64,000 nucleotides of DNA from Epiperipatus broadwayi (GCA_028023455.1 JAQFVV010000010.1:14074001-14138000), one strand, 5' to 3'. Counted from the stretch's first letter, positions 32,866 through 48,484 are shown. Notes: a model not told the origin generated them from the letters alone. Program-made: numbers and translations.

Positions 32866-33166
32866 GTTTTCAACTATCTGTGCTTCGCAAATTAAAATAT
32901 TATTTAAAAAAATTATGAACAATATGTTTTTGATATTTATATTCACTGATGTAACTGGTTGGTAGCTTGATATTATTCTGACTGCAAGTTGTTTTGAACT
33001 GTTGGCATTTAAAAACCCACATGCAAACAATTTGAACTTTTAGAATATTTTTAGTTGCTGAAAATTTAGGAAACATTCGATTATAGGAAATAGGAATATT
33101 AAATAATCGATCAAGCCAATTTATAAATTGGAGTTTGTATATTTTTTACAATATTATTCTCTAGCC

Positions 33167-33358
33167 CAGCAGTTTGGTTCTCAACCTGTGGGTTGCGACC
33201 CCTTTGAAGATCGAACAACCCTTTCACAGGGGTCGCCTAACCATTGGAAAACACATATTTTTGATTCACAACTGTAGCAAAATTACAGGGTTGGGGGTCA
33301 CCACAATATAAGGAACTGTATTAAAGGGTCACGGTATTAGGAAGGTTGAAAGCCATTG
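33167..33358 (+). mobile_element. SPIN/URR1-like hAT-Charlie MITE
   Basis: Ends ggttctcaacct / aggttgaaagccattg. 8-bp TSD ctctagcc (33159-33166, 33359-33366). Body gtgggttgcgacccctttg..cgaacaaccctttcacaggggtcgcctaa..gtagcaaaattacag..ggttgggggtcaccacaa..aggaactgtattaaagggtc matches the URR1/SPIN MITE as recalled from memory. Confidence 0.8.
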
Positions 33359-36300
33359 CTCTAGCCTATTTACAGATTTTTATTACTTGGTCTTTATCTC
33401 ATACAGTGCATGAAAGTTTTCATATAAGTGTCTTGATAATTTGGTAAATACTTATTTCATTACACTTGTTGAAGAGATTATCTTCATAGTCAAACTTCTA
33501 TCTAAAAGAATGATTATGATAATCTTTTATTGTGTGACATTCACATTTTTCTAAATTTTATTTTGCAGTATTTGATAATATAGTATTCTGCTATTATCTG
33601 AATATAATTTTTTAAGAAATGAATTACTATCGACTCATTCTTACATGGTTATAAATTTTATAAAAGTATATGAGTGGGCTATTTTTGCTTATGATTCTAG
33701 AAATATGAAATATCCTATTTTTATTTCTTTGTTTGTACTATACAAATACACATTTAATCAAAATTACCCCCAAATCCACAATTCAGACAGACTAGCCCCC
33801 AAAAAACTAACTAAAGTACAATCAATGATTTTACTGCTGCAAGCAGACTTCTCAAGTGTAAAGAAGTACAAAATAACATAAACTAAACATTACCCACAAT
33901 TCCACGTACCTTCCATACACTCTTAATATTAAAATAATTTTTAAATAAGTTAATTGCTTCAGAATCATAAATTTTTAATAATAAAGATTCTTTAATTCTT
34001 TTTATTTCATTTTTTTTCCAAAGAAGACAACCTTAGCTTCATCAAAATTAATAGTATAATCTGTATTTTTTTCTTGGATGTATAAAACAGAACTAAGATT
34101 TATTTTTAACTTTAATTTTATGTACCTTTATATATATGTTGTAATGTAGATATACATGGTACTTGCAAAATTGAATTATAATTATAAATTCAAAAAGATA
34201 AGAATCTTAGATTTTAAGCTACACTAAAAAAAAGATGGCATTACATATGTAATTGCATGGTTTATTGCGTAGAAGTTCACGAGAAATTCAATCATCAGAA
34301 ATGATAGAGGTGAAGACATGATCCTTAGACGTTAAACTCCTGTGCTTGTCACTGTACCACTACTCCAAACCACACTAAACTATATTGTTGATACATACCA
34401 TACCATTTAATACTAAATTGTTTCAGAAGCATTATTTGGATGCTGTTGGAAAATTTAACATTTGATGATATATTTATATTTATTATGATGCATATTCTAA
34501 TATATCATCATCATTATTTTCAATCATTATCAGTCCACTGCAGGATGATCTCTCCAACTTCAATTCATCTCCGATCTCTAGCCTCTCTTCTCCACATCAC
34601 CCCCGCATACTTCCTTATTTTATTCATTCATATCATATGTGGTCTCTTTCTAGGTCTTTTACAATCTCTTGGAATTCAGTTTAAGATTTCATCATTCTAA
34701 TATATACTGTACTGTTAAATAAATGATTAGTGAAATAGTTCTCTTGATAAACGAAATGAGGGGGGGTTATAAAGTACAATTTTGTATAAAATAATAAAAA
34801 ACCGATACCATGAGTAACTATAAAAACCCTTTTTGAAATCAAAAGTTTGCCTCTTAGTAGGTTATTGTATTACGGTACTAGATGCATCCAGACACCCATT
34901 AAAATGCTATTCTTAGAAACATTCTATAGTGTATAATACACGTACATCTATGAAAATAGCTAGATAGACAGTTGGCTGCGAAATGTAAGATTTTTTTATT
35001 ACTATAATTCTTTTAATTTTTGAGGTTTTTAAAAATGTCAAAGTAAATTAAAAATTGTTAATATTTTTTTAAAACTAATATTAAAAAAATAATATATTTT
35101 TTATGTGTGTGATTTAAATTTATATGTAGGATATATTTAACGAATAAAATGCTTTTAAATTTTTGGCATTGTTTAAACATTATGTAGGTCTTTCTTGTAA
35201 GAAATTAAAAAGCAAAAAAAAAAAAATTAAGAATTTAAAAGGTTTTTTTCTAATAATAATTAAAACAAGCTTTTTTTTTCCAAACTTGGTAATTAAAAAA
35301 AAAAGCTTTGCAAATTTTAAAAAAAAAAGTTTTTTTTTTTGTTTGTTTCCGATTAGTCATTTTAATTAAGTTATCAAAAAAAGAAAATTAGCCCAACGTT
35401 ACATATTATCAAAAGTAGATCTACTTTTAATTCTCGGTTTTGGAATTTTATGATTTTTTTTGTTCTGCTTTTAAAAGTTAGACTTTGACACACATACGCA
35501 CACGTTCGATTCTAATAAAACATTTATAGGGATGTGCATCTGTAAAAATTCTTAAATCGACCTTGTGAATCGCGCAGGTCACACGTGTCTTTTTAGATAG
35601 TCAAATGCAGTCCTCACAAAACTTTTCAAATAAAACTATAATACCTGCTTTATTTCTTTGCACGGCAATTTAATAATGATTGCTTGTGTCATCAACTTCT
35701 ATAATTTTATTGTTATCGTTTCCTGAAATTGTTCAAACTGGTCCGTTCAATTTTTGTTTGGACTTCATTCAGCGAGGTTGTTATTCTTCGTTCTGTTTTA
35801 ATTTAAAGTACTTTGACCTTTGAACCCCATCTTCTTCCAATAATTTAATCTCATGATACTGGTAATTATTTTTAATTTATATCAAGAAAAACGAAATACT
35901 TTCATAAGTATTCTCGTTTAAAAGAAGTTACTTGGGTCAATTTTTGGGACAATAAATTCTTGTGAATCCTTATACTCAACAATGAAGTTTGTAAAATCAG
36001 CTCATCTGGTGAATGAACGAACATCTTGTGGAACTATTAAATGCTTTCTTAACAAATTTAAAAAAAAATTTTCAATGTTCATTCTAATCAGATACAAACA
36101 CAGTGAATAATAAATATTTTTTATTGATTTTCTTAATTATTAATTTTGTTCTCTTGATTTTTTTGTACTGTTAATAAATCTAATTAATAAAAAAAATATT
36201 TGCTTGCACTGAATACATTTTTTGGGATTAGATTATCTCTCCCCCCCAGTTAGCCTATAACGAATTCAGTAGCCATCCAGAGTTAATTTTGTACATTAAT

Positions 36301-47331: not shown

Positions 47332-48484
47332 TTAAGTGTTATAAGTTATTTTATTCAACTTGAAGAAAAATGCAAACAAGAAACTACAATGAAATTCATG
47401 GCTATTAGATAAAAAGATGAAGAATTTTAGTACAATAATTAGATGAAAATTTAGTTTCTAAATTGTTTTTGACAACCAAAATTAATGGCAAACAGAGGGG
47501 TGATTTTTAGAAAAACAAAATTCTAATTTATGTCAGACAAATATAGTAGTTGATAATTTTATTTATGGTAATAATAACTTCTTGTATTATAATTTTATTT
47601 ATGATAGTAATAACTTGTATTATTTTCCACAACAATTTGAAATATTGCATATTTAAAAAAGTGTAGGAAATAAATATTGAGAATATATTTATATTTGTTT
47701 ATATTTTCTAATTGTTATTCAGTTATTTCATTGTTCATATAAATCAAAACTTACTTTCAATAAGGAACTAATATATTATTGCTAATGATTAATAATTATC
47801 AAGATGTATTGATAAGAATATGCAGTGGAGTAAATAAATAACTGAATGACTATTGCTCATAATTCATAAAAAGTTTGAGCACCGGGAATGCCAAAACTGG
47901 AGTTGATCCAAGGATCTTCTGCACCACTGCGGTAAAACATGTAGGGCTGTGATGGAGTCATTTTCCTGTAGTAGAATGAATATTAAAGAAATTTGTGTGT
48001 AATAATAGAGCTGCATTTGATAATTAAGGCTTTAAGAATTTTTTTTATAGTTAGGTTATTAGGTATGGCCTTGCGATCTGTCTAGATTGGAAGGCTTTAT
48101 CACATCTAACTTATACTTATGATCCCTCCCCCCCAAACTTTGACATTAAATCAAGACATTTTAATAACTGAAATTAACACTTCTTTACAATGTGTGTGTG
48201 TATTTGCTTGCATGTGTTTGATTTTTCATTACATGGTAAATGGAGTAGCCAACAGTAGTATGCTAGTACTAACTAAAAATTGTTTTAAACAAAATTTATA
48301 ATTCTTATGACCACTTGCTTGACGATACAAGCACAATGATAATTATAATCAAATGGAAGAGTTCGTATTCACGCATTGGAAGTAATAATTGCACTAAGCC
48401 AGGGTGATAAATATTCACGCATTGGAAGTAATAATTATCTGTGATCTTTGAGTTCTAGTTTACCATTCTACCATTGCACTAAGC

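What the first reader, a model, noticed from the sequence alone, without database searches (positions are those of the whole stretch)
33159..33366. SPIN/URR1-like MITE in an AT-rich, probably invertebrate genome: candidate horizontal transfer
Seen: a 192-bp hAT MITE with a perfect 8-bp TSD. Known: SPIN hAT elements spread horizontally among tetrapods and were also reported in the bug Rhodnius and the snail Lymnaea; URR1 is the murid SPIN MITE. From memory, this copy aligns to URR1 end to end, including the middle (gaaaacaca..gattca.aac.gtagcaaaattacag), apart from a ~29-bp deletion and small indels. A shared internal breakpoint would imply transfer of the MITE itself or a recurrent deletion.
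Basis: partly seen in the sequence, partly recalled or inferred. Interest (0 to 1): 0.75.

Follow-up and report, generated by a model that had tools for sequence, protein, structure and literature searches.

The report
SPIN jumping-gene miniature in velvet worm
This is a dead 192-base miniature copy of the "Space Invaders" (SPIN) jumping gene in the velvet worm Epiperipatus broadwayi, whose SPIN elements are about 90-96% identical to those of bats and so must have arrived by horizontal transfer, while the miniature itself formed inside the velvet worm lineage.

Summary
Observation confirmed. Window 33167-33358 is a 192-bp hAT MITE flanked by a perfect 8-bp duplication, CTCTAGCC, in single-copy host DNA.

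The genome is the published Epiperipatus broadwayi assembly: the scaffold count is the same (18,588) and the length differs by 179 bp.

The copy belongs to a 186-bp family with at least about 1,700 candidate copies. Thirty aligned copies differ from their consensus by about 6%.

The same genome holds 90 or more decayed 2.7-kb SPIN elements. A consensus of eight has a 615-codon transposase frame. It is 90-93.5% identical in DNA to single copies from bats, a toad, a scorpion and an unidentified sequencing run, non-coding parts included. It is 85-94% identical in protein to fragments from bats and Rhodnius. The inferred ancestor-to-ancestor distance is about 3-4%. Horizontal transfer is therefore supported.

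The shared-breakpoint idea is not supported. The velvet worm MITE joins its two arms at a CGA microhomology. A bat MITE copy and a URR1-like copy join them at two other points. An older 215-bp velvet worm subfamily has the same junction but keeps the 29 bases, so that deletion happened later, in this genome.

This is a new host phylum for a known family, and this scan already reported it on other DNA of this genome (s1-086625). Interest is moderate.

The parts
33159..33166 (.). Left target-site duplication, CTCTAGCC
   Evidence: an exact 8-bp direct repeat of 33359-33366. It fits the hAT/SPIN target pattern seen in 29 other copies.
33167..33358 (+). SPIN-derived MITE, a copy of the 186-bp subfamily that carries the 29-bp deletion; non-autonomous and decayed
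   Evidence: It is 94.5% identical to the family consensus and differs from it at 7.0% of aligned positions. The family has at least 1,698 candidates.
33167..33187 (+). 5' terminal inverted repeat, carrying about 5 extra bases compared with the family consensus, which starts CAGCGGTTCTCAACCT
   Evidence: Alignment of 30 copies. The published SPIN terminal motif is CAGYGGTTCTCAACCT (PMC3014272).
33167..33264 (+). 5' arm: SPIN positions 1 to about 95. It includes the 'middle' (33239-33264), which the long velvet worm copies have lost
   Evidence: MITE consensus positions 1-93 are 89.5% identical to the 5' end of a long bat copy, L110:1674-1766. The same stretch is contiguous in a long scorpion copy, L116. 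Genome hits to the bat 5' arm stop at this point.
33262..33264 (+). Internal deletion junction: TGA here, CGA in the family, shared by both arms (microhomology)
   Evidence: The 5' arm ends ...TATTTTCGA and the 3' arm reads ...ACATTACGA before TTCATAAC.
33265..33358 (+). 3' arm: the last ~125 bases of SPIN minus 29 bases
   Evidence: Alignment to the 3' ends of eight long velvet worm copies and of L112.
33288..33289 (+). Site of the secondary 29-bp deletion in the 3' arm
   Evidence: The missing stretch is present in the long copies L101-L108, in the older 215-bp velvet worm MITE copies L089, L092 and L099, in the bat MITE L113 and in L079.
33343..33358 (+). 3' terminal inverted repeat
33359..33366 (.). 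Right target-site duplication, CTCTAGCC

Best explanation
This is a fossil insertion of a non-autonomous SPIN (Space Invaders, hAT-Charlie group) transposon in the genome of the velvet worm Epiperipatus broadwayi.

Inferred history: an autonomous SPIN of about 2.8 kb entered the velvet worm lineage by horizontal transfer and multiplied. During its activity an internal deletion, joined at a 3-base CGA microhomology, left about 95 bases of the 5' end fused to about 125 bases of the 3' end, giving a 215-bp MITE. A derivative then lost a further 29 bases and 2 bases, and it became the abundant 186-bp family. SPIN transposase supplied by the long copies cut and pasted these MITEs into 8-bp targets of the form nTCTAGAn, duplicating the target each time. 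The copy in the window is one such insertion into single-copy DNA. All long copies examined are now broken, so the family is extinct and the copies decay neutrally, faster at CpG sites.

Shown here: the anatomy of the element, the family, the long partners, the similarity across phyla, and the three different junctions. Inferred: mobilisation in trans, the deletion mechanism, and the order of events. Unknown: the donor and the route of transfer.
For: Host: G000 has 5,601,407,764 bases in 18,588 contigs. Table 1 of PMC9985152 gives 5,601,407,943 bp in 18,588 scaffolds for E. broadwayi.

Family and duplications.

Long elements: L101-L108 are 2.65-2.7 kb with matching ends and 8-bp duplications. 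All have broken frames. There are about 90 transposase hits at 50% identity or more, with open frames of at most 311 aa. A consensus of eight copies gives 2,719 bp and a 615-codon frame, and the copies differ from it by 6-10%.

Similarity across phyla: the consensus is 93.5% identical over 2,273 bp to L111. It is 90-93% identical to a Hipposideros copy, 91% to Molossus, 88.6% to Pipistrellus, 90.8% to Bufo, 90% to Centruroides, 87.5% to Crotalus and 81% to Rhodnius. Against L111, non-coding DNA is 92-94% identical and third codon positions 91%. Protein identity is 91.6% to Myotis, 90% to Hipposideros and 84.7% to Rhodnius. In the tree, the velvet worm copies form a star-like clade with 100/100 support on a stem of 0.033.

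Terminal motif: it matches the published SPIN motif.

Junctions.

Origin in this genome: the older 215-bp subfamily has the same junction, and a few genomic copies continue past the junction.

Not contamination: the flanks are unique, 27% GC host DNA.
Against: No Repbase or Dfam consensus could be used, so filing under SPIN rests on three things: the published terminal motif, the element length, and best matches in published SPIN hosts.

The foreign comparison sequences are single decayed copies. The hosts of L079, L111 and L112 are unknown.

Only one URR1-like copy and one bat MITE copy were available, so a matching junction in an unsampled species cannot be excluded.

No other onychophoran genome could be searched, so patchy distribution within the phylum and the date of entry were not tested.

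The long velvet worm copies sampled lack about 76 bases of the 5' arm that the MITE retains, so they are sisters of the MITE's parent and not the parent itself.
Confidence: 0.9

Rival explanations
1. The MITE formed in another species and was carried into the velvet worm ready-made, together with or without the autonomous element. On this reading the junction, and possibly the 29-bp deletion, are inherited from a donor.
For: The junctions of three independent MITE lineages lie within about 20 bases of each other on each arm. From memory alone they therefore look like one breakpoint. The parent of the MITE kept a 76-base stretch that all eight sampled long velvet worm copies lack.
Against: The velvet worm junction (...TATTTTCGA|TTCATAAC...) differs from the Pipistrellus MITE junction (...AAAACACA|GATATTTAC...) and from the URR1-like junction (...GACCATC|CTGCATATC...). 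Reading it as the bat-type junction would need three extra deletions. Reading it as an independent junction needs none, once the 5' arm is taken from the scorpion and bat long copies. The 29-bp deletion is absent from the older velvet worm subfamily that has the same junction. Some genomic copies run past the junction.
Confidence: 0.07
2. This is an ancient hAT family inherited vertically since the common ancestor of velvet worms and vertebrates, with its ends conserved by function.
For: hAT elements are ancient and widespread. This genome holds thousands of other hAT copies.
Against: Non-coding DNA and third codon positions are 91-94% identical between the velvet worm consensus and L111, a copy from an unidentified sequencing run that groups with a bat copy in the tree. 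The stem distance is only about 0.033. That cannot be reconciled with more than 500 million years of neutral decay of dead copies. Within the genome the copies form a star-shaped burst.
Confidence: 0.01
3. Vertebrate DNA contaminated the assembly, or there is an assembly artefact.
For: The element is far richer in G+C than the 27% GC window around it.
Against: The copy lies inside a 64-kb, 27% GC window on a scaffold that reaches at least 14.1 Mb, with unique flanks and a target-site duplication. Thousands of copies lie on many scaffolds. The family carries deletions specific to the velvet worm, of 29, 2 and 76 bases. The genome paper screened for contaminants.
Confidence: 0.01

Closest known systems
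SPIN (Space Invaders) hAT transposons of tetrapods, Rhodnius and Lymnaea (Pace et al. 2008 and Gilbert et al. 2010, as cited in PMC3157835 and PMC11614815)
   Same: The terminal motif CAGYGGTTCTCAACCT and the 8-bp duplication NYYTARRN match. The autonomous length is about 2.7-2.8 kb. There is a ZBED5/FAM200-like hAT transposase. DNA identity to copies in bats, a snake, a toad and a scorpion is about 90% or more. The family is dominated by MITEs and is now extinct.
   Different: The host phylum, Onychophora, was not in any paper I could find. The velvet worm lineage sits on its own stem of about 3%. The sampled long copies lack about 76 bases of the 5' subterminal region. The main MITE family lacks 29 bases of the 3' arm.
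URR1, the murid SPIN MITE (known to me from memory only). L079 is a URR1-like copy on a metagenome contig of unknown host
   Same: Both are made of the SPIN 5' end plus the 3' end. The first ~75 and last ~125 bases are shared, including the stretch GATTCATAACAGTAGC.
   Different: In L079 the 5' arm stops about 17 bases earlier, the 3' arm starts about 24 bases earlier, and the 29 bases are present. The velvet worm element is therefore not a member of URR1.
Bat SPIN MITE copy in Pipistrellus kuhlii (L113:10899-11053)
   Same: It carries the GGAAAACACA motif of the 5' arm and the whole 3' arm.
   Different: The junction comes directly after ...AACACA and continues with GATATTTACATTA of the 3' arm. 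The 29 bases are present.
Internal-deletion derivatives of Ac/Ds, hobo and P elements, formed by interrupted gap repair (established knowledge)
   Same: All five deletions described here have short microhomology at the junction: CGA, CA, CATC, AG and GCC.
   Different: Nothing in principle. This is the mechanism I infer.

Membership tests
hAT superfamily | 8-bp target-site duplication and short terminal inverted repeats | tested here: met
   CTCTAGCC lies on both sides. In 22 of 29 other copies the duplication matches at 6 or more of 8 positions.
hAT superfamily | Partner element encoding a hAT transposase with the C-terminal dimerisation domain | tested here: met
   There are long 2.7-kb copies, and their consensus has a 615-codon frame. 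The decayed piece scores 19.5 bits against PF05699, which is below the 21.4 cut-off. Homologues at 65-82% identity to the query piece carry PF05699, and others carry PF27046, PF27073 or PF14291.
SPIN (Space Invaders) | Terminal motif CAGYGGTTCTCAACCT and target NYYTARRN (Table 1 of PMC3014272) | tested here: met
   The family consensus starts CAGCGGTTCTCAACCT. The window copy itself has a 5-base insertion in this motif.
SPIN (Space Invaders) | Nucleotide homology along the whole element to SPIN copies in published SPIN hosts | tested here: met
   Identity is 88-93% to copies in bats, 87.5% in Crotalus and 81% in Rhodnius. Tenrec and Myotis are among the best protein hits.
SPIN (Space Invaders) | Best match to the Repbase/Dfam SPIN consensus over other Charlie families | not testable with these tools
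   No repeat library is available, and the founding papers are not held.
URR1 (murid SPIN MITE) | Same internal deletion junction as URR1 | tested here: not met
   The junction differs from the one URR1-like copy available, L079. The URR1A/B consensus sequences themselves could not be compared.
Horizontally transferred transposon | Identity between distant hosts far above neutral expectation, non-coding sites included | tested here: met
   Non-coding DNA is 92-94% identical, third codon positions 91%, and the stem is 0.033.
Horizontally transferred transposon | Patchy distribution among relatives of the host | not testable with these tools
   G000 has no relatives in the searchable genomes, and no other onychophoran assembly could be reached.

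The most novel reading that the evidence does not exclude
Three independent SPIN MITE lineages (velvet worm, vespertilionid bat, and a URR1-like copy) cut the element at different points, yet all within about 20 bases of each other on each arm. They keep roughly 78-95 bases at the 5' end and 125-150 at the 3' end. This convergence would mark the minimal cis-acting ends that SPIN transposase needs, or a microhomology hotspot for deletion. A Neotropical velvet worm (Trinidad and Tobago) would also join the South American network of SPIN exchange proposed for opossums, bats, monkeys and Rhodnius.
Probability: 0.35. Interest if true: 0.5.

Novelty: new member of a known kind. Interest (0 to 1): 0.4.

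Why it matters
SPIN is the textbook case of a transposon that crosses between animal phyla. Onychophora would be a further host phylum, and I found no paper that reports SPIN in velvet worms. The host is a soil-dwelling predator from the Neotropics, the region where the proposed exchange between vertebrates and Rhodnius took place. The case also shows how to tell transfer of a MITE from independent birth of MITEs: here the junctions differ and the extra deletion is local. Finally, the data suggest which terminal stretches of SPIN are repeatedly kept. It is not a new kind of element, and this scan had already reported the velvet worm SPIN from another part of the genome.

Tried and rejected
- The top 30 loci for the hAT dimerisation domain PF05699 in the genome were checked for SPIN ends. 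None had them; they belong to other, more abundant hAT families.
- Exact scans for the SPIN 5' end in viral contigs and in bacterial and archaeal genome contigs gave nothing.
- The metagenome scan gave 20 contigs. Fourteen come from one sample (Ga0081606) and share only the 31-42 base terminal repeat, so they could not be used for the breakpoint question.
- The founding papers (Pace 2008, Gilbert 2010) are not held. What I say of them comes from papers that cite them.
- One paper search (SPIN, URR1, hAT) returned only physics and chemistry papers.
- An Rfam scan of L079, run to identify its host through SINEs, found nothing.
- A search for an empty-site paralogue failed because both flanks are single-copy.
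- The look-up of the snail protein P0101 failed because the machine did not answer.
- After no more DNA could be cut from the genome. For that reason the two copies that run past the junction were not read, and I did not try another route.
- A velvet worm SPIN consensus was computed in the sandbox for comparisons only. It could not be handed to the protein tools, so the searches used two unaltered fragments by reference.
- None of the fetched contigs was taken for human.

Full report
**The observation.** The window is uniformly AT-rich, 24-30% G+C, and has no open frame of 120 codons or more. At 33159-33166 and 33359-33366 lies the same octamer, CTCTAGCC. It brackets a 192-bp, much more G+C-rich element at 33167-33358 with imperfect terminal inverted repeats.

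**The host.** The window lies on contig 10 of an assembly of 5,601,407,764 bases in 18,588 contigs. I tested that against the genome paper. Its Table 1 lists 5,601,407,943 bp in 18,588 scaffolds (PMC9985152). The scaffold number is identical and the length differs by 179 bp, so I accept the identification. The animals came from Trinidad and Tobago. The paper reports 71% repeats but says nothing of hAT elements or transposon transfer.

**The family.**
- The 192-bp element finds 1,698 first-look candidates in the genome. All 40 scored hits are 87-92% identical.
- Thirty copies aligned with their flanks give a 186-bp consensus that starts CAGCGGTTCTCAACCT.
- The copies differ from that consensus by 6.3% on average, or 4.6% outside CpG positions. 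The sample is biased towards the best-preserved copies.
- Ten of 29 copies have perfect 8-bp duplications and 22 of 29 match at 6 or more of 8 positions, with the pattern nTnTAGAn.
- The window copy is 94.5% identical to the consensus. It has about five extra bases inside its 5' repeat and one extra G at the deletion site.
- Both of its 267-bp flanks are single-copy in the genome. The repeat therefore ends exactly at the inverted repeats, and the insertion sits in ordinary host DNA.

**The autonomous partner.**
- A 3' stretch taken from a metagenome copy (L079) found genomic copies that carry 29 bases more than the MITE.
- Their upstream 1.5 kb is mutually homologous.
- Eight such loci, once extended, proved to be elements of 2.65-2.7 kb with SPIN-like ends and 8-bp duplications.
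- Every one has a broken frame.
- About 90 genomic hits at 50% identity or more to a 170-residue transposase piece have open frames of at most 311 residues.
- A majority consensus of the eight, computed in the sandbox for comparison only, is 2,719 bp with a 615-codon frame. The copies differ from it by 6-10%.

The genome therefore once held active autonomous elements that are now all dead.

**Is it SPIN?** The published terminal motif of SPIN is CAGYGGTTCTCAACCT, with target NYYTARRN (Table 1 of PMC3014272). The family consensus matches both. The published length of SPIN_Og is 2,836 bp (PMC10162687).

Two unaltered transposase fragments were used as queries. Their closest relatives are protein fragments from:
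- bats (Myotis, Molossus, Hipposideros, Pipistrellus, Cnephaeus);
- tenrec;
- Rhodnius prolixus;
- rattlesnake and geckos;
- the toad Bufo bufo;
- Centruroides scorpions;
- the land snail Bradybaena.

Identity to these is 72-88%. Hydra and a myxozoan lie further off. Against the consensus translation the values rise to 91.6% for Myotis, 90% for Hipposideros and 84.7% for Rhodnius. Several of these hosts are the published SPIN hosts. I could not compare with Repbase or Dfam, and the founding papers are not held.

**Horizontal transfer.** The DNA around those proteins was fetched by reference. Identity of the velvet worm consensus to each single copy:

| Copy | Identity | Length compared |
|---|---|---|
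| Logan contig of SRR23263160 (L111) | 93.5% | 2,273 bp |
| Hipposideros | 90-93% | about 1,900 bp |
| Molossus | 91% | 1,035 bp |
| Pipistrellus | 88.6% | 1,107 bp |
| Bufo | 90.8% | 987 bp |
| Centruroides | 90% | 1,175 bp |
| Crotalus | 87.5% | 618 bp |
| Rhodnius | 81% | 938 bp |

Against L111, by class of site:

| Site class | Identity |
|---|---|
| 5' non-coding | 94.2% |
| Codon position 1 | 96.6% |
| Codon position 2 | 97.1% |
| Codon position 3 | 91.2% |
| 3' non-coding | 92.3% |

In a maximum-likelihood tree of 749 columns, the eight velvet worm copies and their consensus form a star-shaped clade with 100/100 support. Its stem is 0.033 substitutions per site from the group of bat, Rhodnius and unknown copies. 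Dead copies in lineages separated for more than half a billion years cannot stay this similar at silent and non-coding sites, so vertical descent is excluded.

Contamination is excluded on three grounds: the unique AT-rich flanks, the spread over many scaffolds, and deletions found only in the velvet worm copies. The donor, the direction and the date remain open. The 5-8% decay is of the same order as that reported for SPIN MITEs in a snake (about 6%, PMC3157835), but no neutral rate is known for velvet worms.

**The breakpoint question.** This is the part of the finding that goes beyond the earlier report of this scan.

The 5' arm:
- Long copies from a bat (L110:1674-1860) and a scorpion (L116) show the SPIN 5' arm running without a break through ...CCTAAGACCATCGGAAAACACATATTTTCGA and on into unrelated subterminal sequence.
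- MITE consensus positions 1-93 match this at 89.5%.
- Genomic hits to the bat 5' arm stop at exactly that point.

The 3' arm:
- In the long velvet worm copies and in L112 it reads ...CATATCAGATATTTACATTACGA and then TTCATAACAGTAGC....

The three junctions:
- Velvet worm MITE: 5' ...TATTTTCGA joined to TTCATAAC... 3', with CGA common to both arms.
- Pipistrellus MITE copy (L113:10899-11053): joins directly after ...AAAACACA to GATATTTAC....
- URR1-like copy L079: joins after ...GACCATC to CTGCATATC....

These are three different junctions, each at a short microhomology (CGA, CA, CATC). Reading the velvet worm junction as a decayed bat-type junction would need three extra deletions. Reading it as independent needs none.

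The order of events:
- An older, rarer velvet worm subfamily of about 215 bp (L089, L092, L099) has the velvet worm junction. It still carries the 29 bases and the two bases GA of CCTAAGACC.
- The order is therefore junction first, then the 29-bp and 2-bp losses, then the large expansion, all inside this lineage.
- The eight long copies share a different loss, of about 76 bases between two GCC motifs in the 5' arm, which the MITE does not have. They are sisters of the MITE's parent and not the parent itself.

**Mechanism.** Shown: the structure, the family, the partner elements, the similarity across phyla and the junctions. Inferred from what is established for hAT elements:
- The MITEs arose by interrupted gap repair or template switching at microhomologies.
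- They were moved in trans by SPIN transposase, which binds the terminal and subterminal sequences.
- Each insertion duplicated 8 bp of target.

The excess of changes at CpG positions (6.3% against 4.6%) suggests germline CpG methylation in this animal, but I did not follow that up.

**Limits.**
- The foreign sequences are single decayed copies.
- The hosts of L079, L111 and L112 are unknown.
- Calling L079 URR1-like rests on my memory of URR1.
- Only one bat MITE copy and one URR1-like copy were available.
- No other onychophoran could be searched, so patchy distribution within the phylum is untested.
- None of the fetched contigs was taken for human.

**Verdict.** The SPIN and horizontal-transfer reading is supported. 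The shared-breakpoint idea, and with it MITE transfer, is not. The element is a new host record for a well-known family. I found no paper linking velvet worms and SPIN. This scan had already reported it on other DNA of the same genome (s1-086625). Interest is moderate.

Noticed in passing
G000, many scaffolds, for example C6258:1887651-1888136 and C485:100770-101255; C73:5801812-5802048 and C190:1581087-1581323: There are two other hAT families with many copies that score identically and have long open frames. One has 636 residues and is about 40% identical to the SPIN transposase piece. The other has about 850 residues. They look young and possibly still active in this velvet worm.
   Followed up: no
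30 MITE copies, L001-L030: Divergence from the consensus is 6.3% over all sites but 4.6% outside the 12 CpG positions. CG alternates with TG or CA in the alignment. This suggests CpG hypermutability, and so germline methylation, in E. broadwayi.
   Followed up: partly
L061-L068, L070, L071, L074, L076, L078, L080 (JGI sample Ga0081606); for example L068:1100-1396: Fourteen contigs from one metagenome sample carry elements that share only the 31-42 base SPIN terminal repeat. L068 has it at both ends of a stretch of about 297 bp. This is probably another MITE family, in an unidentified eukaryote, that borrows the SPIN ends.
   Followed up: partly
L069:1080-1444 (Ga0056111_1001750): This is a 365-bp SPIN-derived MITE with an unrelated insert of about 170 bp between the arms and a near-perfect duplication (CACTACGT / CACTAGGT). 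It has a fourth, different internal structure. The host is unknown.
   Followed up: partly
Proteins P0089, P0116 (Centruroides scorpions), P0101, P0103, P0111 (Bradybaena similaris), P0084 (Bufo bufo), P0014 (Hydra vulgaris), P0028 (Thelohanellus kitauei); loci L116, L117: SPIN-type transposase fragments are annotated as ZBED5, ZBED8 or FAM200-like genes in scorpions, a land snail and a toad, with 76-77% protein identity to one decayed velvet worm copy. The scorpion and toad DNA is about 90% identical to the velvet worm consensus. More distant relatives occur in Hydra and a myxozoan. I did not check whether these hosts are already reported for SPIN.
   Followed up: partly
L077:13031-13063 (OFFG01001609.1): A 13-kb contig densely packed with long open frames, which looks bacterial, ends in a 33-base match to the SPIN terminal repeat. 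It could be a chimeric assembly or chance.
   Followed up: no
L109:3725-4827 (Rhodnius prolixus JBMIRN010000002.1): The Rhodnius copy is a deletion derivative of about 1.1 kb. It keeps only about 31 bases of the 5' end, followed by the C-terminal third of the transposase gene. This is yet another breakpoint.
   Followed up: partly
window 47545-47600: There is a weak match (77% over 60 bases, E 0.001) to positions 262-320 of the long velvet worm SPIN consensus. It is probably chance.
   Followed up: no
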